Assembly: GCF_006345805.1 (NCBI RefSeq) | Contig: NC_043002.1 | Location: 42,346,001-42,410,000 of the forward strand | Direction: 5' to 3' | DNA: 64,000 bases | Source: Octopus sinensis | Lineage: Eukaryota | Part shown: positions 2,965-63,800 of the stretch, piece after piece | Layout: the number at the start of each line of letters is the position of its first letter | Numbering within the stretch: position 1 is the stretch's first letter | The notes under the pieces: generated by a model | What the model was told of the DNA's origin: nothing | Databases searched by the model: none | What the model saw: only the letters and a program-made list of their open reading frames with translations | Program-made: the position numbers and the translations under genes

Positions 2965-3651
2965 GAGTCATTCTATGGTAACAGCTTCGCGCTTGTGATG
3001 GAAGTATTAATAATATTTGTAAGTCAATCTCAGTATATTTTTCTACCTGTACTGAATAAAGAGACTAATATCTTTCTCTCTCTCGCTCTCTCACTCTATA
3101 TATATATATAAAATTGGGAAATCTATCTACAGCTATCTCATTGTGTGTGTGTGTGTCATTGATAAGTCTTTTCCGGATTTGTCAGTCTGTCTGCTTCCAC
3201 TTAATGTCTGTAATTGTCTATCGTCGTTTAGATGCGTTGGGTATGTATTAATTTGCTTTTCTGTTTTTGCTATGCTATTGTCTAAAATTATCGAGATATA
3301 TATATATATTTAAATGTGCATTATATATATATGAGAGATAGCGAGAGAATCTGTGCTTGTAATGAGAAAGCGAGACTAATAGAACTCGACGGTGCGAAAA
3401 AAAATTGATAAAAAATTAATAAAAAAAAGGAAAATAATAAACCTTCACGCTCTCGAATGCTTCGGTAGTAGAGAGAATAACAGAACGACGGAATACAAAA
3501 ATAAAACAAACAAATCTTTGCGCACGAGATTCTTTATTGTTTGTTTGTTGTCAACGTTCTTTCTCACTATTTACTCTTATATTCTTTTGTCAGCTCCACA
3601 TTCACATTCGTTACTTCCACTATCTCTCTCTCTTACACACACCCATATAAT

Positions 3652-3689
<38 letters not shown>

Positions 3690-4003
3690 TTGCTTTCTCT
3701 TTCGTATTACTATAGTATTTGTTTCTTTCCAATCCAAACCTCATTCATATTTTCATTCTTCTTACAAACACCCTGTACACACATACATACATACATGCAC
3801 GCACGCACACACACACTATATATATATATATAGTGTGTCTAGATTGTTAGGAGAATAAGCTTGAATGGCTATCAGTAAAGTATTGCTGCTCGTGCTTCCA
3901 AGCACTTATGTTAGACCCCAGTAAAATTCCACCGCTATTACTACCACTGCTACAGTGGGTATCATTACTATAACCACTACTACTACATACTACTACTATT
4001 GCT

Positions 4004-4038
4004 ATGAAGCGATATGGTCGCAATACTAGCCTTCATAG
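4004..4038 (+). CDS. Candidate first coding exon B, copy 1 (MKRYGRNTSLH + AG, phase 2)
   Basis: ATG 4004 opens the only frame that reaches donor AG|gtatgt at 4039; in-frame upstream TAA at 3971; CpG-retaining UTR-like upstream sequence. Confidence 0.5.
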
Positions 4039-4932
4039 GTATGTGTTTTGTTTGTTACAGTATTTATCTGTTGTTTAGTTTATTTATAAAGCTATAGAAT
4101 GTGTTTTAATATAGACTGTTTCATCTCTTCCCTCTCTCATACGTTTGCATCCATTTTTCCTCTTCTGTGAATGAGTTTATGTACATACGTAATGTATGGA
4201 TGGGTGGATGTTGACACGCTTGATATCTATCTATCTATCTATCTATCTATCCGTCTGTCTGTCTGCTTTTCATCTATACTCATACAAAAACACCTCCCCC
4301 CATATACACAGATATCTCTGTATTGTCTATGGAAGGACTCTCTTTCGTCACCTCGGTCTCTCTTTAGCAGCTCTCTGCCACATCTTCTTTCTCCACTTCC
4401 ATCACTCTGTCTACCAGCTCATCTATTTCTCATCTCGTGCTTTCCGTCTCGAATCTGTCTTCCTTTCTAATCCTTAATCTCTCTTCCTCGTCATTCTGTC
4501 TCTAATCTATCTTCCTCTCCACTTCTCTCTCTACCCTCTGACTCTCTGTATGAACGTGCACACAGCATAGTTATTATTCACCTCCTTTGTCTTGTCTCCA
4601 TAATTATATATATATATGAGAGATAGCGAGAGAATCTGTGCTTGTAATGAGAAAGCGAGACTAATAGAACTCGACGGTGCGAAAAAAAATTGATAAAAAA
4701 TTAATAAAAAAAAGGAAAATAATAAACCTTCACGCTCTCGAATGCTTCGGTAGTAGAGAGAATAACAGAACGACGGAATACAAAAATAAAACAAACAAAT
4801 CTTTGCGCACGAGATTCTTTATTGTTTGTTTGTTGTCAACGTTCTTTCTCACTATTTACTCTTATATTCTTTTGTCAGCTCCACATTCACATTCGTTACT
4901 TCCACTATCTCTCTCTCTTACACACACCCATA

Positions 4933-4994
<62 letters not shown>

Positions 4995-5315
4995 TTGCTT
5001 TCTCTTTCGTATTACTATAGTATTTGTTTCTTTCCAATCCAAACCTCATTCATATTTTCATTCTTCTTACAAACACCCTGTACACACATACATACATGCA
5101 CGCACGCACACACACACACTATATATATATATATAGTGTGTCTAGATTGTTAGGAGAATAAGCTTGAATGGCTATCAGTAAAGTATTGCTGCTCGTGCTT
5201 CCAAGCACTTATGTTAGACCCCAGTAAAATTCCACCGCTATTACTACCACTGCTACAGTGGGTATCATTACTATAACCACTACTACTACATACTACTACT
5301 ACTACTACTATTGCT

Positions 5316-5350
5316 ATGAAGCGATATGGTCGCAATACTAGCCTTCATAG
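5316..5350 (+). CDS. Candidate first coding exon B, duplicated copy 2
   Basis: Identical to 4004-4038; donor gtatgt at 5351. Confidence 0.45.
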
Positions 5351-7329
5351 GTATGTGTTTTGTTTGTTTACAGTATTTATCTGTTGTTTAGTTTATTTAT
5401 AAAGCTATAGAATGTGTTTTAATATAGACTGTTTCATCTCTTCCCTCTCTCATACGTTTGCATCCATTTTTCCTCTTCTGTGAATGAGTTTATGTACATA
5501 CGTAATGTATGGATGGGTGGATGTTGACACGCTTGATATCTATCTATCTATCTATCTATCTATCCGTCTGTCTGTCTGCTTTTCATCTATACTCATACAA
5601 AAACACCTCCCCCCATATACACAGATATCTCTGTATTGTCTATGGAAGGACTCTCTTTCGTCACCTCGGTCTCTCTTTAGCAGCTCTCTGCCACATCTTC
5701 TTTCTCCACTTCCATCACTCTGTCTACCAGCTCATCTATTTCTCATCTCGTGCTTTCCGTCTCGAATCTGTCTTCCTTTCTAATCCTTAATCTCTCTTCC
5801 TCGTCATTCTGTCTCTAATCTATCTTCCTCTCCACTTCTCTCTCTACCCTCTGACTCTCTGTATGAACGTGCACACAGCATAGTTATTATTCACCTCCTT
5901 TGTCTTGTCTCCATAATTATATATATATATATGCACACACAGACAATGTATCCGCCCTTTCTATCAAAACTCTTGCTTTGTCTGTTTTTACCTCTCCCAT
6001 ATGTAAATGTCTTATCTTCTGTCTATCTGTATACATACATGCATGCACGTGCGTGTGAGTATATATATGTGTGTGTGTGTCATTTGAATACATTACGGTG
6101 TGATAAAACAAAGAATATATCTAAAAATTTAAGACATTCCTGTCTCCTTCCCTTTATTTTTTCCTCTCCCCGCTTTCTCTCTCCTCTATGTCTCCTCTTT
6201 CTTTTTCTCTTCTTGCTTCTGCTTCTCTACCCCACAATTGGTTTGTCCACCCCCTCGATGTCACACAATATGGCTACTTTGGTTGGTTGTCTTGCATTAG
6301 AATTACTGCTACTGTTTTTGCATCACAGTTCGCTACCGATGACTAGACTATAGTGGTGTTCTTTGTTCTTGAAGCATACTGTTATATATATATATATATA
6401 TTTATTTATATATAGACGCGCACATTTGATTTTTGTCATTTACATTTCGCATCCACCACTACCAATATCATAGCTCTCTCCACCGTCTGTCAATCTCCTG
6501 TCAACAGCAGTTTGGTCAGGTTCTTCGATTATTATTCACTCCATAAATTCCCGAAATCTCTTTTCCATATGTATGTTGACCGAGGAGACTTACGTTCAAA
6601 AGCTTTCCCGTCATGACCATTTCGTCTTTTCTATAATTAGGGGACAACGTTGTTCAACGTCTCTCTTTAAGACAGTAGGCGATAGGTTTTCAGAAAGATT
6701 TGGCTGGTATTTCTAGCTTGCCGAATGACCGTGTTAGAGGTTCCCTTGTCGATTTGAGGTGTGTGTGTGTGTATGTATATATATATATATATATATATCG
6801 TCAAAATCTCCTTATGTATGCATTTGTGTTCGTCTCTACAAGCACTTCACCGATACGAGGGAGTAATTTCAAGATGTTTGGTCAGTTTACCTTAAATTTC
6901 ATACTGCTATTTTACAAAGGAAAGGATACATTAATGTAATCTCAAATATCGCTAACCTAGGGGTAAACAAAAATTCTTCTCTTGCTGTTATCTCCTCTCT
7001 CATTTGCGCGTGCGCGTGTGTATTATATGCAAGTACACACTGATATATAATGTATATCGGTGTATATTCTTTTTAGTTATATATAGATTTCGCATATGAA
7101 TATTATATAGACAAATATACTGTGCTCGCCGCAATATATATAACTGTTCTTATACATATATACATTAGATTGCGTGTTCATTGCCAAGTGGAAACTTGCC
7201 AGATGTGAATTTTCTCTCCCTCTCTGCTCATTATCATCCTCTTGTTTTCTTTTTCTTCCCCACCTTCTGTTTCTCTAACATACAACAATCTCTCTCTCTT
7301 CACATTCACCTTCTCTCTGCCTGTCAGTC

Positions 7330-29155: not shown

Positions 29156-29392
29156 TAGTCAGGAAAGTGGTTTTTACAGTAAGGAAAACATTTTCCCAGG
29201 CTAATTTTGAGTTTGCCACCCTTGAAATGGCAGTTTTACCTTTTGTTTCTTAGCTACGTGTGTCTTCTACGATAGTCAGGAAAGTGGTTTTTACAGTAAG
29301 GAAAACATTTTCCCAAGCTAATTTTGAGTTTGCCACCCTTGAAATGGTAGTTTTACCTTTTGTTTCTGAGCTATGTGTGTCTTCTAAGATAG
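29156..29392 (+). repeat. 117-bp tandem duplication (2 units, 5 substitutions)
   Basis: tagtcaggaaagtgg starts at 29156 and again at 29273. Confidence 0.95.
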
Positions 29393-31443
29393 CCTTGGGC
29401 TAACCAAAGCCTTATGAGTGAATTCAGTAGAGAGAAACTAAAAGAAGCATCATGTGCATGTATATGTACATGTGTGTATGTTTTTGTGTCTGTTTGTCCC
29501 CTGTCACCACCACTTGACAACTGGTGTTGGTGTGTTTACATCCCTGTAACTTAAGTTTGGTTAAGGACACTGATAGAATAAGTATCAGACGTTAAGAAAA
29601 ACTAAGTAATGGGCTCAATTCATTCGACTAAAAGTTCTTCAAAAGAAACATAGAAGTCTGGTGCAGACTCCTGTCAAACTGTCCAACCCATGCCAGCATG
29701 GAAGGTGGATGTTAAATGATGATGGTAATAATGATGTGGTGCTCCAGCATGGCTGCAGCCAAATGACTGAAATTAGTAAAAGATGGAAGATATGTATTGT
29801 TTATTTATTTATTTTTTTTTACACACTGGTTTCAATCATTGCATGATAGCCATACTGGAGCATTGCACTTAAACAATTTTTGTCAGTCATATTGAAACTC
29901 CACTACCATCTTCATTCTTATTCTTACCTGGTATTTATAAAATGGTCTTTAGATTGCACTTCAGCATAAAAAGAAATGCATCGCCTTTCTCTAGTAAACT
30001 CGTGCATTGACACTCACTCACACACACACACACACACGCACACACACACGCACACAAATATACATACATGTTTTGTCTCCTATAATAATTTCTCTTTTAC
30101 TTGTTTCATGCTGGGGTACCAACTACAAGGGTTTAGTGAAGAAATCTCCCTTAGTACTTACTTTTTAATCCTGGGTCTTATTCTATCAGTCTCTTTTTTT
30201 CCTAACTGCTAATTTATGAGGATGTAAACAAACCAACAGTATATGTCAAATGGAAAGGAAGGGGAAAGACACACACATGCATGGTAGGGTAAGAGGAATG
30301 TATGGTAGTTGTCATCACATATGATACTGTCTTAAAGAACATTTTGTTTGCTAATGTCATCACCGACATTATTTGAAATGGAGGTTGGCACTAAGATTCC
30401 ATTCTTCTAGATTATAGACCTGAATAATTTGCTTAACTATTATTATGTTTTTCTTTTATGGCCCTCCTTCCCTCCCTTCCCATCAACTGGTATTCAAATA
30501 AGGTTGCATAGAAAGGTCACTTGACTGAGTTCCATCATTGGATTGCTGTTACATTCAGACTTAGTCTTGACTTCAGAAGGAAATTGATATTTCATGTCAG
30601 TTTATTTATTAGGTTTTGGTCTTTTAATTTTTCTGCTTAAATTTCCATCCAATTGGGTCATTGAAATGAGTTAGCCTTCAGATCAGCCTCAATCCAGCAG
30701 ATCCATTATCAAAAGCATTCTAACCATGACCATCCTGTAACACGGTTTAATTAATTTTTTTGCTTTTTATATCTTAATATAGTGTTCGATAAGTCCTTCT
30801 TTATTTAAGGAGTAAAGCAATCATGGCAACTTTTTTCATGGAGATAACCACATGAAACTGGAATTATTATCAGGCAGGCCACACTGCTAAAAATTTCAAG
30901 GTAATTTTTCATCAGGTGTGTCTTTCAGAAAGTCCTGCATCTGCTGTAGAGTTTGAATTTGAGGAAGATTTATTTTCCATTTCTAGCAGACAAATTGATT
31001 GCATAGAGATTTTGTCATAAGCTCTACTAAATGATTAGCTGTGGTGCTATAAATAGTCAACTGAAAATATTTGGATGATCGGTTGTGAATAGTATTTTCT
31101 CCAGTACAATGATTCAATAAGAGATTACTAATTTCTTCAAAATGTTTTCATGTTAACTACTGAAAATCTAATCATATTTTTTTTCAAATCACAAGGATCC
31201 ATATGTGGGAGGGGATGCTTATGCCTGGATTCAATATTAAGATGATGTAATATAAATTTTCCTTTATCTCTTGCAGTTAACTATTTTCACTAGAGAAACT
31301 GAATTCTGTTGCGGTACTGCCACTGCTTACATTAGGGAAATATATGACCTGCAGTACTTAATTGATGGAACCCTTATCCAGTGCCATGATCTGCTAGAGG
31401 TTCTCCATGTCCTCAATTCACACTCTGCCCTTTTAAATTAGGA

Positions 31444-40612: not shown

Positions 40613-40981
40613 ATACTCTATCTTTTACTTGTTTCAGTCATTTGACTGCAGCCATGCTGGGGCACTGCCTTGAAGGGTTTTAGTCAAAGAAATCAAGCCC
40701 AGGGTTTATTTTTTTTAAAGTCTAGTACTTATTCTATCAGCCTCTTTTGTTGGACCACTAAGTTACAGGGACACAAACACACCAACACTGGTTGCCAAGC
40801 AGTGGTTGGACACACACACTACAGCCTTTTTTCAGCTTCCATCTATCAAATCCACTCTCAAGGTTTGGTTGGCCCAAAACTATAGTAGAACACACTTCCC
40901 CAAGGTATCATGCAGTGGGACTGAACCTGGAACCATGTAGTTGGAAAGCAAGCTTCTTACCTCACAGCTACACATGTGCCC
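40613..40981 (-). mobile_element. CORE-like tRNA-SINE, antisense, CpG-decayed
   Basis: Reverse complement of the 10489-10856 family. Confidence 0.8.
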
Positions 40982-43715: not shown

Positions 43716-44098
43716 TAGGCGCAGGAGTGGCTGTGTGGTAAGTAGTTTGCTTACCAACCACATGGTTCCAAGTTCATTCACACTGTGTGGCAACTTGGAC
43801 AAATTTCTTCTGCTATAGCCTCGGGCCAACCAAAGCCTTGTGAGTGGATTTGGTAGATGGAAACTGAAAGAAGCCTGTCGTGATGATGATGATGATGTGT
43901 GTGTCTGTGTTTGACTCCCCAATATCGCTTGACAACCGATGCTGGTGTGTTTACATCCCCATAACTTAGCAGTTTGGCAAAAGAGACCGATAGAATAAGT
44001 ACTAGGCTTACAAAGAATTAGTCCTGGGGTCGATTTGCTTGACTAAAGGTGGTGCTGCCGCATGGCCGCAGTCAAATGACTAAAACAAGTAAAAGAGT
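43716..44098 (+). mobile_element. Full-length CORE-like tRNA-SINE
   Basis: Head taggcgcaggagtggctgtgtggtaag, tail aaacaagtaaaagag. Confidence 0.85.
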
Positions 44099-44922: not shown

Positions 44923-45885
44923 CAATAATCTTCCATGCAGTTTCCTCTGGAAAATTTCACTCGTGAAGCATTAATCAACCAGGATGTTGCACAAATTAAT
45001 TGAACTTGAAACTAAGTGTTTGTGAAGGGGACATCTTAGACACACTGCTATTCCTGTAAAAGTTTCATGAATATTTCCTCTCTGTAAACAGAGCAATGGA
45101 TACAATTAAATATATAGATTTAGAAATGCAGAGTTCTTCATATAGAAACAGAATATACAAGTGGAGTGTAGGGCTTTAAAGAGGAAATTTTATTCATGAA
45201 GATGCCTATGTCTGCCACAAGATGTGAATTAGTGATATGAAAGATGGTTTTCAAATCTCCACCATCATCTCTCTCTGATTATTTCTTTCTCTCTAACTCT
45301 CTTTCTCTCCTTTCTTTTCCAACTGAGGTATCCATGTATCTCCTCCACAGCAAGACACCTATCTCTGTCCCTCATTTATACTTTTAACCTCTCATCAACT
45401 GGCACAAAGCCACTTCTGTTAATGCTACTCCACACCGACCAGCTGAGGGTCTTTGTCTTGCGACAAAGTTATCCTGCTAGTGTTGGTGCCATGAAAAAAG
45501 CACCCAGTCCACTCTGTAAAGTAGTTGGCATTAGGAAGCGCATCCAACCATAGAAACCATGCCAAATCAGACAAAAGAGCTTGGCACAGCCTCACTGAAT
45601 TGCTGGCTCCAATTAAACCATCCAGTCCATGCCAGCATGGAAAATGGAAATTTTGACATTTTTCACTTTAATATTTCTTATAAACAGTTTATAACCTCTA
45701 TCATGAAATATGAGTTTTTTAAAAACATCTTTGTCATGTATCAGAATACACCTTCTTACAAAATTTCTTAAATGCTCCAATAACTTACTTCTCCTTTCTT
45801 TAATATTCTGAGTACATGTGTGGTAAAAGTTTTATTTTGGTGGTGGTAGTGGTAAAAGGTAGCTTTTGATATTTTTTTTACTCAT

Positions 45886-47232
45886 TTTGTCCTTATTTTT
45901 ACCAGCTTTATGACTTGGTATGATTAATTTTTTATTATCTTATGATATTTACAGCAACACAGTTAATGTTAGTTTTGACACTCCTTTTCCTCCTCAATCC
46001 TCAAATCATATGTTTTTCAAAAGGATAGGACCTGGTGATCAATCATTGTCAGTTATTTGCTGAATCACTATTATTGTTAATAAGATTATTTTACACTTTA
46101 CTACTATTAAATATATTATTTATAGCACTGTTTGACTTAACAACACCAACATTTCAGTTATTTCATTCATGCACATTTAGAGACACCTATAAAAGCATGA
46201 TTTTCAGAATTGGCCATATTCATTGTGTTAAGTCATCATCATCATTTAATGTCTGTTGTCCATGCTGGCATGGGTTGGAAAGCTTGACCAGGGCTGGCAA
46301 GCTGGAAGGCAGCACCCGACTCCAGTCTGATTTGGCATGGTTTCTACTAATGGATGCCCTTCATAACGACAACCACTCAGAGAGTGTAATGGGTTCTTTT
46401 ACGTACCACTGGCACAGGTGCCATTTGTGACACCAGTATATTCCACAACTGCACTTTTACTTGGCTTGATGGGTCTTCTTCTCCAGCACAGCATAATAAT
46501 AAGATACATGGTAAACTGCAATCCTGTTTTATAAAAGGTGCACTACTATATATGCAACAAAAGCCAAGTGGCTAATAAATTATGAGCTTGCGGGTTTATG
46601 TCATTGAACAGTATCTTGGGCAAGTGGCTTAACCTGAACTATAGGTAACTATTTTGACTGCAATTGAATAGATGGAAACTGTGTTGAGGTCCATTGAATG
46701 ACTGATTGTACTTGTAATGTGTGTCAGTCATTCAGTGGATCTCATCACAGTTTCTATCTATCTATCCAATTGCGCTCAAAAGATTTGAGTTGCTCATGAT
46801 TTAAGGTAAGTCACTTTCCCCAAGATACTGTGCAATGAAATCAACTCATGAGCTCACAATTTATTAGCTATTTGGCTTTTATTACATACTTAGTAGTGCT
46901 CCTTTTATAAAATAGGATTGTAGTTTTCCATGTATTTTTTATATATACATATATATAAAATACATTGTTATTCAACCAATTTTGAAAATATGCTATACAT
47001 GTAAATATATTTATTAGTAGTAAAGTGTAAAATAATCTTATTAACAGTAATAGTGACTCAGCAAATAACTGAAAGTGATTGGTCACCAAGGTTCTAGCCT
47101 TTTGAAAAATATATACTTAGAAGATTGAGGAAGAAAAGGAGTGTCAAAAATAACATTAACCATTTCATTGTAAACATTGTATGATAATAAATTAATCACA
47201 CCTAGTCAGGGAACTGGTAAAATAAGGACAAA
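45886..47232. repeat. Large imperfect palindrome (fold-back): arms 45886-46705 and 46724-47232, 18-nt spacer
   Basis: Manual alignment of both arms; ORFs 46035(+) and 46868(-) share QLFAESLLLLIRLFYTLLL. The left arm carries an extra SINE (46233-46495) and a ~70-nt insert. Confidence 0.95.
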
Positions 47233-47794
47233 GATTTATGTGTGGATATATATATGTATATATATATATATATATAAACACAAACTATTATTTAGACAGT
47301 AAAAGAAGTCAACTGTTACAGCAGAAAAGGCTCAAGTTTTCAGGAAATAAAGATACTGAGAATTACTTAAACATTAATGCAGAGTTCTTCATAATATGTC
47401 CTTGCATTGACAAGTACCTTCACATCCACTAATAAATCCCACTTGCAGCAGCAAAGACCATAGTCTGGCAAATGCTTTACACTCTCTGTACTCACAATGG
47501 ATTTCCCTCCTTCTTACCATTCAAATCATTAATGCTTCTTTCCCCTCTTTTCACCATATGTTTCACTTATATTAGTGGTTATCCACTGACAATCTCCATA
47601 AAGTTACTTGCTCTAGCACCTCCTTATAACATACCTTTAGCCCATTTCAACAGGCAATAAATCACCTTTAATTTCACCTGATTTTCCCATACTACATGGT
47701 GCACAATCTAAGCAAATAGCTCACCCATGTGTATATATGTATTTGCATATCTCTATGTATGTATATGGATATGTGTGTTTGCAGGTATATATAT

Positions 47795-62469: not shown

Positions 62470-63800
62470 GGAAAGTAGTTCTGACAAAATCGTAGAGATG
62501 CTGGAACAGAGGCAAATGTGTGTTGTGTACAAGATGTACCATGTGCCTCAGCCAGATTCCTCACAGGCAACGAGCACAAATAGAAATTCTTTTGGGTGTA
62601 TAACAGTGCCTGGGGTTAGTGGTGGGTAGAATAAGCATTTTGTTGGTTGAGAAATGGATAAAGCAATTGAACTAGTCAGAGTACATGACCCTGTACCTAA
62701 GATGACAGCAACAGTTTTTTTATGTATGTGTGTTACAATTAGGATTGGCAGAAGAGCAAAAGAACTGTTTCTATGACACCCTATTGCAACTTTGAGAGGA
62801 CATTACACAAGGTGTGTAATGTGGAAGTTGCTAAGAAAGCTAGGAGTAGATAAATGGCTTGTGAAAGTCACGCAAGCCATCTTGAAAGATGCCATCAGCA
62901 AGGTGAAAGTAAGCAATGAAGACTGGTTGTCTGTAGTGAGCCCGGCATGCCAATGACCTAGATCTCATTGCTGATTCCTGCTGAGAAGAATGTGGATGCA
63001 AGAGCCTATAATCAAGAAGTCTAAAACCTATCAAAATCAAAACTTTTAGTTAACAGAAAAGGAGACAGGTTTCTAGTTCCACCAAGTATATTGGTTATGC
63101 TCTATATACAGAAAAGGAATTGTTGGAAATTCCTTGTGTACTAAATGTATACTGTGGGTGCATAAAAGATGCAGTGGCAAGCAGGCTGACAGAGTAGAAA
63201 TATTTTGTATGTAGTAAATACATGGTAGTAGTTAGTACTACAAGAGTTCAGATGGCTCCCAAGAAGTAAATAGGTCTTGTTACTTAGGTGATTTAATCAG
63301 CAGTAGATGTGTTGCAATAGCATAGTAGTTATAGTAATGATAAGGTGGAAAAAATTCCAGGTTGCTATTTTATTAACAACAAAAGGACTCTCTTGCCTAA
63401 TGAAGAGTGGCTTGTATGATTCTTGTGTTCAAAGTGTGATGCTGAATGGTAATAAAACATGGACATTGAATATGAAGGATGTGCGAAAGACTGGGAAGAA
63501 AAGAATGAAGTGAGCATGTTCTACTGGATGAAAAGTCACGTGCATGAATGGCAGTACAAATAAGCTGGGAGTAAAAGACTGAGTATAAGTGGAACCAGAT
63601 GCATTGTGCAATACTGTGGACTGTGTTGGTACTAACTTGTTTGTGGGATGACAATTGAGTAAAAAGGTCAAATACTCCAAATGTAAGGAACTTGTAGAAG
63701 AAAAAGGCCAAGGAATATAAAAGAAGAGATATAAAAGCTAATCTAAATGGGATGAGCCTCACAAAGGAGATAAAGGACTGCAAGAAATGGTAAACTGCTG
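62470..63800 (+). mobile_element. Degenerate RTE-clade LINE (reverse transcriptase and C-terminal region)
   Basis: Translations MWKLLRKLGVDKWLVKVTQAILKDAISKVKVSNE and WKKFQVAILLTTKGLSCLMKSGLYDSCVQSVMLNGNKTW match RTE RT motifs; many stops and frameshifts. Confidence 0.8.

What the first reader, a model, noticed from the sequence alone, without database searches (positions are those of the whole stretch)
45886..47232. 1.35-kb intronic fold-back palindrome: a ready-made long dsRNA
Seen: about 500 bp of sequence is duplicated in inverted orientation around an 18-nt spacer (46706-46723), roughly 80-90% identical by eye. The centre is a CORE-like SINE copy folded tail to tail, and only the left arm carries an extra (GAT)n-tail SINE. 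In the innermost ~38 bp, 3 of 4 differences are G.U pairs in the + transcript. A consensus donor AAG|gtaagt (46805-46811) lies inside the stem. No TSD is visible, so it looks like a template-switch duplication rather than a transposon. Known: coleoids have very active ADAR editing of long dsRNA. Inference: hyper-edited intronic duplex, endo-siRNA or miRNA source, or splicing modulator.
Basis: partly seen in the sequence, partly recalled or inferred. Interest (0 to 1): 0.75.

Follow-up and report, generated by a model that had tools for sequence, protein, structure and literature searches.

The report
Old inverted duplication in octopus DNA
A real but decayed 1.35-kb inverted duplication in repeat-rich non-coding octopus DNA would fold into a long imperfect RNA hairpin if transcribed; nothing here indicates that it does more than the many similar repeat hairpins already known in octopus.

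Summary
The inverted repeat is real. Left 45886-46117 pairs with right 47004-47232 (86% identity over ungapped columns). Left 46493-46705 pairs with right 46724-46946 (84%). The spacer is 18 nt (46706-46723). Only the left arm carries an extra 375 bp, mostly a (GAT)n-tail SINE that has at least 10 other copies in the window and matches Octopus bimaculoides gene models.

The innermost ~100 bp of each arm is a very diverged, 3'-truncated copy of a second SINE family (tRNA-derived, CORE-like). The outer ~300 bp of each arm matches no repeat in the window. There is no target-site duplication of 5 bp or more, no sub-repeats, and no second copy in the 64 kb.

Best reading: one ancient local fold-back or template-switch duplication of "flank plus SINE fragment", followed by neutral decay. 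Differences are spread evenly along the arms.

G:U versus A:C differences on the + strand are 25 to 18 (p=0.36), so pairing shows no strand preference. The donor-like AAGGTAAGT is at chance level. "Intronic" is unverified: no coding exon is detectable in the window.

If transcribed, either strand folds into a two-part hairpin of ~445 bp. That is a generic ADAR substrate of a kind already described as abundant in octopus. Copy number, expression, editing and small RNAs could not be tested. Interest is low.

The parts
45886..46117 (.). Outer left arm; pairs with 47004-47232
   Evidence: blastn 84.6% over 234 columns, E=3e-63; 86% over ungapped columns; no other copy in the window
46118..46193 (.). 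Left-arm-only 76-bp segment (indel relative to the right arm), bounded by TATAGCA / TATAAAAGCA
   Evidence: Global alignment of 46090-46520 with the reverse complement of 46915-47031; read directly from the sequence
46194..46234 (.). Short shared middle segment; pairs with about 46957-46994 in the right arm
   Evidence: AGCATGATTTTCAGAATTGG vs AGCATATTTTCAAAATTGG
46235..46492 (-). Left-arm-only insertion: a (GAT)n-tail SINE. The recognisable body is 46235-46432 with its tail at the 46235 end. The 60 bp at 46433-46492 are unassigned and may be the 5' part of the element
   Evidence: At least 10 related copies in the window at 77-89% identity; multiple alignment shows homology starting exactly at the (ATC)n tail; six-frame translation of a sister copy hits 13 proteins, 11 of them named Octopus bimaculoides gene models and 2 unnamed
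46493..46705 (.). Inner left arm; pairs with 46724-46946
   Evidence: blastn 79.6% over 225 columns, E=8e-40; 84% over ungapped columns
46611..46694 (+). Diverged, 3'-truncated fragment of the tRNA-derived, CORE-like SINE family (motif CTTGGGCAAGTG at 46615-46626)
   Evidence: nhmmer with a model of six other in-window copies: E=3.5e-4, model positions 102-191; motif scan
46706..46723 (.). Unique 18-nt spacer (hairpin loop), TTGTACTTGTAATGTGTG
   Evidence: I6; sequence
46724..46946 (.). Inner right arm
46735..46836 (-). Mirror copy of the CORE-like SINE fragment
   Evidence: nhmmer E=2.2e-5, model positions 94-191
46803..46811 (+). AAGGTAAGT, a splice-donor-like 9-mer; it is the antisense of the SINE core motif in the right arm
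   Evidence: 2 matches in the window vs 0.83 expected; 23 of 100 shuffles reach 2
46947..47003 (.). Right-arm middle segment (57 bp) opposite the 375-bp left-arm segment; partly (TA)n
47004..47232 (.). Outer right arm
45485..45655 (+). Upstream copy of the (GAT)n-tail SINE, inverted relative to the copy inside the left arm; it could form a competing duplex
   Evidence: I4 (45520-45572 vs 46325-46377, 83%; 45496-45572); tail read

Best explanation
This is an old, single-locus inverted duplication. A stretch of about 0.5 kb of non-coding octopus DNA was copied in reverse next to itself. That stretch was roughly 300 bp of non-repeat sequence followed by the 5' and core part of an already old tRNA-derived, CORE-like SINE. 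An 18-nt unique loop was left at the centre. The most likely route is fold-back priming at a broken or stalled DNA end, or a replication template switch. Afterwards both arms decayed at a neutral-looking, even rate to about 15% total difference. The left arm also gained a (GAT)n-tail SINE and a 76-bp indel.

The locus has no demonstrated function. Its one predictable molecular behaviour is that a transcript crossing it on either strand will fold into a two-part imperfect hairpin. The inner stem is ~213 bp and the outer stem ~230 bp, separated by a 375/57-nt asymmetric loop. Such a hairpin is a generic substrate for ADAR hyper-editing.

Shown here: the anatomy, the repeat content, the absence of a TSD, the even decay and the fold. 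Inferred: the mechanism of origin, and editing if the locus is transcribed.
For: - Arms are collinear right up to an 18-nt spacer.
- Each arm is a composite. Only its inner ~100 bp matches the in-window CORE-like SINE model, and only model positions 94-191. The outer and middle parts have no other copy in the 64 kb, whereas both true SINE families have 10 or more copies there.
- There is no TSD of 5 bp or more at 45886/47232, and no tandem sub-repeats in the arms.
- Outer and inner segments have the same divergence (13.8% and 16.1% mismatches; JC 0.15 and 0.18). Mismatches are spread evenly (permutation p 0.12-0.25). This fits one event followed by neutral decay.
- There is no strand bias in G:U versus A:C differences (25 to 18, p=0.36).
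- The SINE present in one arm only begins exactly at its (ATC)n tail, so it is a later insertion. It also shows the palindrome is not an assembly artefact.
- Both strands fold into the long hairpin.
- Fold-back duplications with a unique spacer are a documented class (PMC3907307, PMC10622511, PMC11724301).
- Octopus has the strongest hyper-editing signal and an unusually high density of loci that form long dsRNA (PMC5625713). Most octopus editing lies in intron and 3'UTR hairpins (PMC9699675).
Against: - Genome-wide copy number could not be measured, because no octopus genome was reachable with these tools. A low- or middle-copy palindromic transposon family is therefore not excluded.
- Short TSDs of 2-4 bp (for example TTTA or TA) cannot be judged in this AT-rich context.
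- Junction microhomology, the signature of fold-back priming, is erased at this age.
- The one-arm SINE looks older than the duplication: about 19% from a crude four-copy consensus, against about 7.5% per arm. That is awkward unless the SINE comes from an older subfamily or the arms have been homogenised by gene conversion.
- Transcription is unproven.
Confidence: 0.6

Rival explanations
1. It is one copy of a palindromic non-autonomous DNA transposon (Foldback-like or a long-TIR MITE, comparable to the palindromic Harbinger-derived repeat of Xenopus) that captured a SINE fragment. It inserted here and then decayed.
For: Both arms stop at equivalent outer positions. Palindromic repeats that are heavily edited exist in other animals (PMC5625713). 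A weak 4-bp TTTA direct repeat can be placed at the ends. Having no second copy in 64 kb says little about a family of fewer than a few thousand copies.
Against: There is no TSD of 5 bp or more. There are no sub-terminal or tandem sub-repeats. The arms are a mosaic of a retroposon fragment and unrelated sequence. There is no other copy in the window. The six-frame arm query found nothing in 5.8 billion proteins, which include O. bimaculoides models, whereas the true SINE found 13. That last contrast is weak evidence.
Confidence: 0.25
2. It is a functional RNA hairpin kept by selection: a hpRNA or endo-siRNA source, a miRNA-like locus, a dedicated ADAR substrate or sponge, or a splicing modulator that uses the donor-like site in the stem.
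For: Both strands give a long predicted duplex. The + strand is 31 kcal/mol more stable and has slightly more G:U than A:C. A consensus donor lies in the stem. The central 96-nt hairpin resembles a miRNA precursor in shape.
Against: The G:U excess is not significant (p=0.36). The decay is even, with no conserved block. The longest perfect Watson-Crick run is 32 bp in the outer stem and 12 bp in the inner stem. The donor motif is at chance level. All Rfam matches are to unrelated miRNA families at 22-44 bits, against gathering scores of 70-119. The arms show no similarity to any protein-coding gene that could be a target. A 375-nt SINE bulge was tolerated.
Confidence: 0.06
3. It is two independent insertions of the same ~500-bp interspersed repeat, landing 18 bp apart in opposite orientation.
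For: Inverted pairs of the abundant SINEs do occur elsewhere in the window.
Against: Both copies would have to end at the same internal position of a SINE and sit only 18 bp apart. A family abundant enough to make that likely should have other copies in the 64 kb, but it has none.
Confidence: 0.05
4. It is an assembly or sequencing artefact, such as a chimeric palindromic long read.
For: Palindromic chimeras are a known artefact class. This statement rests on my own knowledge.
Against: The arms differ by ~15%, by several indels and by a whole SINE. Artefactual palindromes are near-identical.
Confidence: 0.02

Closest known systems
Fold-back (inverted) duplications with a unique spacer, formed by intrastrand fold-back priming at a DNA break or by replication template switching (Hermetz et al. 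2014, PMC3907307; Al-Zain et al. 2023, PMC10622511; short templated inverted duplications in yeast, PMC11724301)
   Same: Two inverted copies of one contiguous segment, joined through a short non-duplicated spacer. There is no TSD, and the duplicated segment is arbitrary local sequence rather than a mobile unit.
   Different: The arms here are ~0.5 kb and the spacer is 18 nt. The human constitutional cases are Mb-scale with spacers of 0.8-70 kb, and the yeast templated insertions are about 5-34 bp. This event is ancient, so junction microhomology can no longer be read.
Neighbouring inverted repeats that form intramolecular dsRNA and are hyper-edited by ADAR (Porath et al. 2017, PMC5625713; Zhang et al. 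2023, PMC9989829)
   Same: It meets the operational criterion used in PMC9989829: a reverse-complement alignment of at least 80% identity and at least 50 nt within +/-2 kb. The organism is the one with the strongest hyper-editing signal. SINE sequence takes part in the duplex.
   Different: Most such duplexes are two independent insertions of one repeat family. Here the duplex comes from a local duplication and more than half of it is non-repeat sequence. Transcription and editing were not shown.
Foldback / long-TIR palindromic DNA transposons (Drosophila FB, Galileo; the palindromic Harbinger-derived repeat of Xenopus mentioned in PMC5625713)
   Same: Almost the whole unit is an inverted repeat around a short centre.
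   Different: There is no TSD, no sub-repeat structure in the arms and no second copy in the window. The arms contain a retroposon fragment.
Drosophila hpRNA loci (PMC10317233)
   Same: Inverted-repeat arms of several hundred bp, born by local duplication, sometimes carrying TE sequence.
   Different: hpRNA arms are homologous to a target gene or TE, and young hpRNAs are near-perfect. Here no target is detectable, identity is 84-86%, and no small-RNA data exist.
CORE-SINEs of octopus (OR1/OR2 of Ohshima & Okada 1994, as cited in PMC4824008 and PMC4758252)
   Same: The in-window family has a tRNA-like head followed by ...CCTTGGGCAAGTG.... From memory, this resembles the start of the MIR/CORE domain. 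Octopus is a documented host of CORE-SINEs.
   Different: No CORE consensus was available to align, so superfamily membership is a resemblance and was not tested. The copy in the palindrome is only a weak, partial match even to its in-window relatives.

Membership tests
Foldback / MITE-type DNA transposon | Target-site duplication flanking the element (7-10 bp for FB, hAT, P and Mutator; 2-4 bp for Tc1, PIF and piggyBac) | tested here: not met
   A systematic scan of all boundary offsets found no direct repeat of 5 bp or more, only 4-bp AT-rich coincidences. TSDs of 2-4 bp cannot be judged.
Foldback / MITE-type DNA transposon | Multiple dispersed copies with the same termini | not testable with these tools
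   There are 0 further copies in the 64-kb window. No octopus genome was reachable: searches found nothing, and the metagenome scan for an arm 23-mer gave 0.
Foldback / MITE-type DNA transposon | Arms built of tandem sub-repeats (FB-type) | tested here: not met
   TRF finds no sub-repeat array in the arms, only a 27-bp x1.9 repeat at 47003-47055 and an 11-bp x2.5 repeat at the left edge.
Fold-back inverted duplication (break- or replication-associated) | Two inverted copies of a contiguous local segment joined through a short unique spacer | tested here: met
   Arms are collinear up to the 18-nt spacer 46706-46723.
Fold-back inverted duplication (break- or replication-associated) | The duplicated unit is arbitrary local sequence, not a mobile unit | tested here: inconclusive
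   The arm is non-repeat sequence plus a truncated SINE fragment, which fits. The genome-wide copy number of the outer part is unknown.
Fold-back inverted duplication (break- or replication-associated) | Inverted microhomology at the spacer / duplication junction | not testable with these tools
   Microhomology cannot be told apart from the arms once the event has happened, and about 15% divergence has accumulated since. An outgroup with the pre-duplication state is needed.
ADAR hyper-editing substrate (intramolecular dsRNA) | Nearby reverse-complement match of at least 80% identity and at least 50 nt (criterion of PMC9989829) | tested here: met
   Two blocks of 234 and 225 columns at 84.6% and 79.6% with gaps, or 86% and 84% without. 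MFE is -618 / -587 kcal/mol.
ADAR hyper-editing substrate (intramolecular dsRNA) | Both arms on one transcript; clusters of A-to-G mismatches in RNA-seq | not testable with these tools
   No expression data were available. No exon was found in the window. The only hint is T>A on the + strand in all eight 8-kb bins.
miRNA precursor | Match to a curated family at its gathering score | tested here: not met
   There are 0 hits at gathering score. In E-value mode the centre hits several unrelated plant and animal miRNA models at 22-44 bits, against gathering scores of 70-119.
hpRNA / endo-siRNA locus | Arms homologous to a target gene or TE; Dicer-dependent ~21-nt siRNAs | tested here: inconclusive
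   The six-frame arm query has no protein match. Only a SINE fragment is shared with other loci. Small RNAs are not testable.
CORE-SINE (inner arm fragment) | tRNA-derived head, ~60-bp CORE domain, LINE-derived tail | tested here: inconclusive
   The CTTGGGCAAGTG motif and downstream region match the in-window family. The head is not matched and the tail is absent. No CORE consensus was available for a formal test (one search failed).

The most novel reading that the evidence does not exclude
The hairpin is a transcribed, lineage-conserved long dsRNA inside a neural gene intron or lncRNA of octopods. It would be processed into endo-siRNAs or used as a dedicated ADAR-binding or splicing-control element. 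The mild + strand G:U excess would then be a trace of selection for pairing in the sense transcript.
Probability: 0.04. Interest if true: 0.6.

Novelty: new member of a known kind. Interest (0 to 1): 0.15.

Why it matters
The finding has little importance on its own. It is one more inverted-repeat locus in a genome already known to be rich in them. It has modest value as a clean example showing that some dsRNA-forming loci in octopus arise by local fold-back duplication of mixed unique and SINE sequence, and not only by paired insertions of one repeat. It could also serve as a dated marker if the one-arm state is found in other octopods. It would become interesting only if RNA-seq or small-RNA data showed specific processing, or if the stem proved to be conserved.

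Tried and rejected
- Exact look-up of the two longest palindrome ORFs in the contig index: nothing on record.
- Six-frame pieces of both arms (1283 aa) against 5.8 billion proteins, to detect a dispersed family through spurious ORFs: no hit. Later calls showed the database holds octopus proteins only as UniRef gene models, so this negative is weak.
- A search for coding exons. Of the stop-to-stop ORFs of 40 aa or more in the window, the 79 that passed all filters were joined (4875 aa) and searched: no hit. The filters were at most 20% repeat-masked, GC at least 0.36, entropy at least 3.8, and exclusion of the LINE-like stretch and of the palindrome itself. 'Intronic' therefore stays unverified.
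- Fetching octopus genomic loci through the SINE-containing proteins P0001 and P0007: not in the contig index.
- Metagenome scan for an arm 23-mer: 0 hits. A control scan with the SINE tail found 7 contigs that share only the ~50-bp tail. There is therefore no usable octopus DNA in that collection.
- Full-text search for the SINE sequences in papers: 0 hits. Gilbert & Labuda 1999 is not held.
- Pfam on the RT-like ORF remnants at 62.7-63.5 kb: nothing significant.

Rejected readings: assembly artefact (the arms are too different), two independent insertions, a miRNA, and a selected G:U bias.

Full report
**Observation**

The region was read and scanned for repeats. blastn of 45850-46714 against the reverse complement of 46715-47300 gives two collinear blocks:
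- 45886-46117 with 47232-47004: 84.6% over 234 columns, E=3e-63.
- 46493-46705 with 46946-46724: 79.6% over 225 columns, E=8e-40.

Global alignment gives 200 matches and 32 mismatches in the outer block, and 177 matches and 34 mismatches in the inner block. That is 86% and 84% identity over ungapped columns, with 9 and 14 gap columns. The arms meet at an 18-nt unique spacer, 46706-46723. The left arm holds 375 bases (46118-46492) where the right arm holds 57 (46947-47003).

**Anatomy of the arms**

The window contains two abundant SINE families.

The first family ends in (GAT)n. The left-arm-only segment carries one copy in minus orientation. Its recognisable body is 46235-46432, and homology to sister copies begins exactly at the (ATC)n run. 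At least ten further copies or fragments lie in the window at 77-89% identity. A six-frame translation of a young sister copy hits 13 proteins at 67-96% identity. The 11 that carry a name are Octopus bimaculoides gene models with SINE-derived stretches; 2 are unnamed. This identifies the window as octopus DNA.

The second family has a tRNA-like head followed by ...CACCTTGGGCAAGTGTCTTCTACTATAGCC...GGAAACTG.... An nhmmer model built from six in-window copies, with the palindrome left out, recovers 11 clear copies. It also hits both inner arms weakly:
- 46836-46735 on the minus strand: E=2.2e-5, 18 bits.
- 46611-46694 on the plus strand: E=3.5e-4, 14 bits.

Both hits cover only model positions ~94-191. 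Typical copies score 150-190 bits and continue ~160 bp further 3'. The centre of the palindrome is therefore an old, strongly diverged, 3'-truncated fragment of this SINE, and the truncated ends face each other.

Calling it 'CORE-like' rests on two things. One is my memory of the MIR/CORE motif. The other is published statements that octopus OR1/OR2 are CORE-SINEs (PMC4824008, PMC4758252). It was not formally tested.

The remaining ~300 bp of each arm consists of the outer block and the short shared middle piece (46194-46234, pairing with ~46957-46994). This part has no other copy in the window.

**Transposon or local duplication**

A scan of every boundary offset found no direct repeat of 5 bp or more flanking 45886/47232, only 4-bp AT-rich coincidences. 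TRF finds no sub-repeat structure in the arms. It is the only near-adjacent large inverted pair in the window; all other inverted pairs are separate SINE copies 750 bp to 4.7 kb apart.

Outer and inner blocks have the same divergence (JC 0.15 and 0.18). Differences are spread evenly: permutation p for the most and least conserved windows of 40, 60 and 85 columns is 0.12-0.35.

These facts fit one duplication event that copied 'flank plus SINE fragment' in reverse beside itself, followed by neutral decay. Later the left arm gained the (GAT)n SINE and a 76-bp indel bounded by TATAGCA / TATAAAAGCA. Fold-back priming at a resected end and replication template switching are the documented routes to inverted duplications with a unique spacer (PMC3907307, PMC10622511, PMC11724301). 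I take this as the most likely origin, with confidence 0.6.

The main rival is a palindromic non-autonomous DNA transposon (0.25). It cannot be excluded because genome-wide copy number was out of reach. Look-ups of palindrome ORFs and of SINE-containing octopus proteins found no contigs. The six-frame arm query found no protein. The metagenome collection holds no usable octopus DNA. An assembly artefact is excluded by the 15% divergence and the one-arm SINE.

**RNA structure and signs of selection**

As RNA, the + strand of 45850-47270 folds to -618.3 kcal/mol and the - strand to -587.1 kcal/mol. In both, the arms pair with each other. The duplex has two parts:
- An inner stem of ~213 bp: 177 Watson-Crick pairs, longest perfect run 12.
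- An outer stem of ~230 bp: 197 Watson-Crick pairs, longest perfect run 32.

The two stems are separated by a 375/57-nt asymmetric loop.

The binomial p is 0.36 overall and 0.13 for the inner block. The '3 of 4' in the innermost 38 bp is true but carries no weight.

The donor-like AAGGTAAGT at 46803-46811 is the antisense of the SINE core motif. It occurs twice in the window against 0.83 expected, and 23 of 100 shuffles reach that count.

Rfam finds nothing at gathering scores. In E-value mode the central 96-nt hairpin hits several unrelated plant and animal miRNA models at 22-44 bits, against gathering scores of 70-119. That is a generic hairpin signal.

Nothing here indicates selection on the structure.

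**Context**

No tRNA, no Rfam family and no convincing coding exon was found in the 64 kb. Of the stop-to-stop ORFs of 40 aa or more, the 79 that passed my repeat, GC and complexity filters were joined into one query. It found no relative among 5.8 billion proteins, although that database holds O. bimaculoides gene models.

The locus may sit in an intron longer than the window, in a non-coding transcript, or between genes. Non-repeat DNA shows T>A on the + strand in all eight 8-kb bins (AT skew -0.067). By analogy with introns of other animals (my own knowledge), this hints at + strand transcription but does not prove it.

**Comparison with what is known**

- Porath et al. 2017 (PMC5625713) report that octopus has the strongest hyper-editing signal of 19 species. 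They also report an exceptionally high fraction of loci able to form long dsRNA (4.4e-3), mostly through neighbouring inverted repeats.
- Zolotarov et al. 2022 (PMC9699675) find most octopus editing in intron and 3'UTR hairpins.
- The palindrome meets the operational dsRNA criterion of Zhang et al. 2023 (PMC9989829).
- It is therefore an ordinary member of a known class. Its one slightly unusual point is that the duplex comes from a local duplication of mostly non-repeat sequence.
- It does not meet the tested defining features of Foldback elements (TSD, sub-repeats), of miRNA precursors, or of hpRNAs (a detectable target, near-perfect arms; PMC10317233).

**Open point**

The SINE present only in the left arm is ~19% from a crude four-copy consensus, while each arm is only ~7.5% from their common ancestor. 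There are three possible explanations:
- The copy derives from an older subfamily.
- The arms have been partly homogenised by gene conversion.
- The duplication skipped the SINE.

The exact coincidence of the homology break with the SINE tail favours a later insertion.

**Verdict**

The locus is a new member of a known kind, and its interest is low (0.15). The decisive tests are genome-wide copy number, orthologous loci in other octopods, strand-specific RNA-seq with hyper-editing analysis, and small-RNA mapping. None of these could be run here.

Noticed in passing
window 3322-5930: A 1.3-kb unit is tandemly duplicated (3322-4617 and 4607-5930) at 97.4% identity, far younger than the palindrome. 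Identical ORFs appear twice in the ORF list.
   Followed up: partly
window 29156-29392: A 120-bp tandem pair (29156-29275 and 29273-29392) at 95.8% identity. The second and further copies (29377-29484) also give an nhmmer hit to the CORE-like SINE model.
   Followed up: no
L001-L007 (JGI metagenome contigs), e.g. L002:465-518, L003:1125-1190: The ~50-bp 3' tail module of the (GAT)n SINE (TCCATGCTRGCATGGGTTGGA plus the (ATC)n side) occurs in 7 metagenome contigs that share nothing else with the window. This suggests a tail module shared with a widespread LINE or SINE partner in other organisms.
   Followed up: partly
window 1-64000: Non-repeat DNA has T>A on the + strand in all eight 8-kb bins (overall AT skew -0.067, GC skew about 0). 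This uniform strand asymmetry is compatible with + strand transcription of the whole window.
   Followed up: partly
window 46235-46432 versus the arms: Age paradox: the SINE found only in the left arm is ~19% from a crude in-window consensus, while each arm is only ~7.5% from their common ancestor.
   Followed up: partly
window 62651-63510 (+): ORF remnants that look like the C-terminal part of a LINE reverse transcriptase and a Cys-rich motif. Pfam gave nothing significant (best hit: PHD finger, E=0.02), so this stays an impression.
   Followed up: partly
P0001-P0013 (O. bimaculoides gene models): Thirteen proteins, 11 of them named O. bimaculoides gene models (THO complex subunit 5, PARN, 6-phosphogluconate dehydrogenase and others), contain 30-45-aa stretches that match translated (GAT)n SINE sequence at 67-96% identity. 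The SINE segments are either exonised or mis-annotated.
   Followed up: no
window 40619-40980 and 43718-44096: Two copies of the CORE-like SINE (~360 bp, 76-80% identity) lie in inverted orientation 2.7 kb apart. This is another potential intramolecular duplex in the same window, of the ordinary 'two insertions' type.
   Followed up: no
window 45485-45655 versus 46235-46432: An upstream (GAT)n SINE copy is inverted relative to the copy inside the left arm (83% over 53 nt in I4). In a transcript it could compete with, or extend, the palindrome's folding.
   Followed up: no
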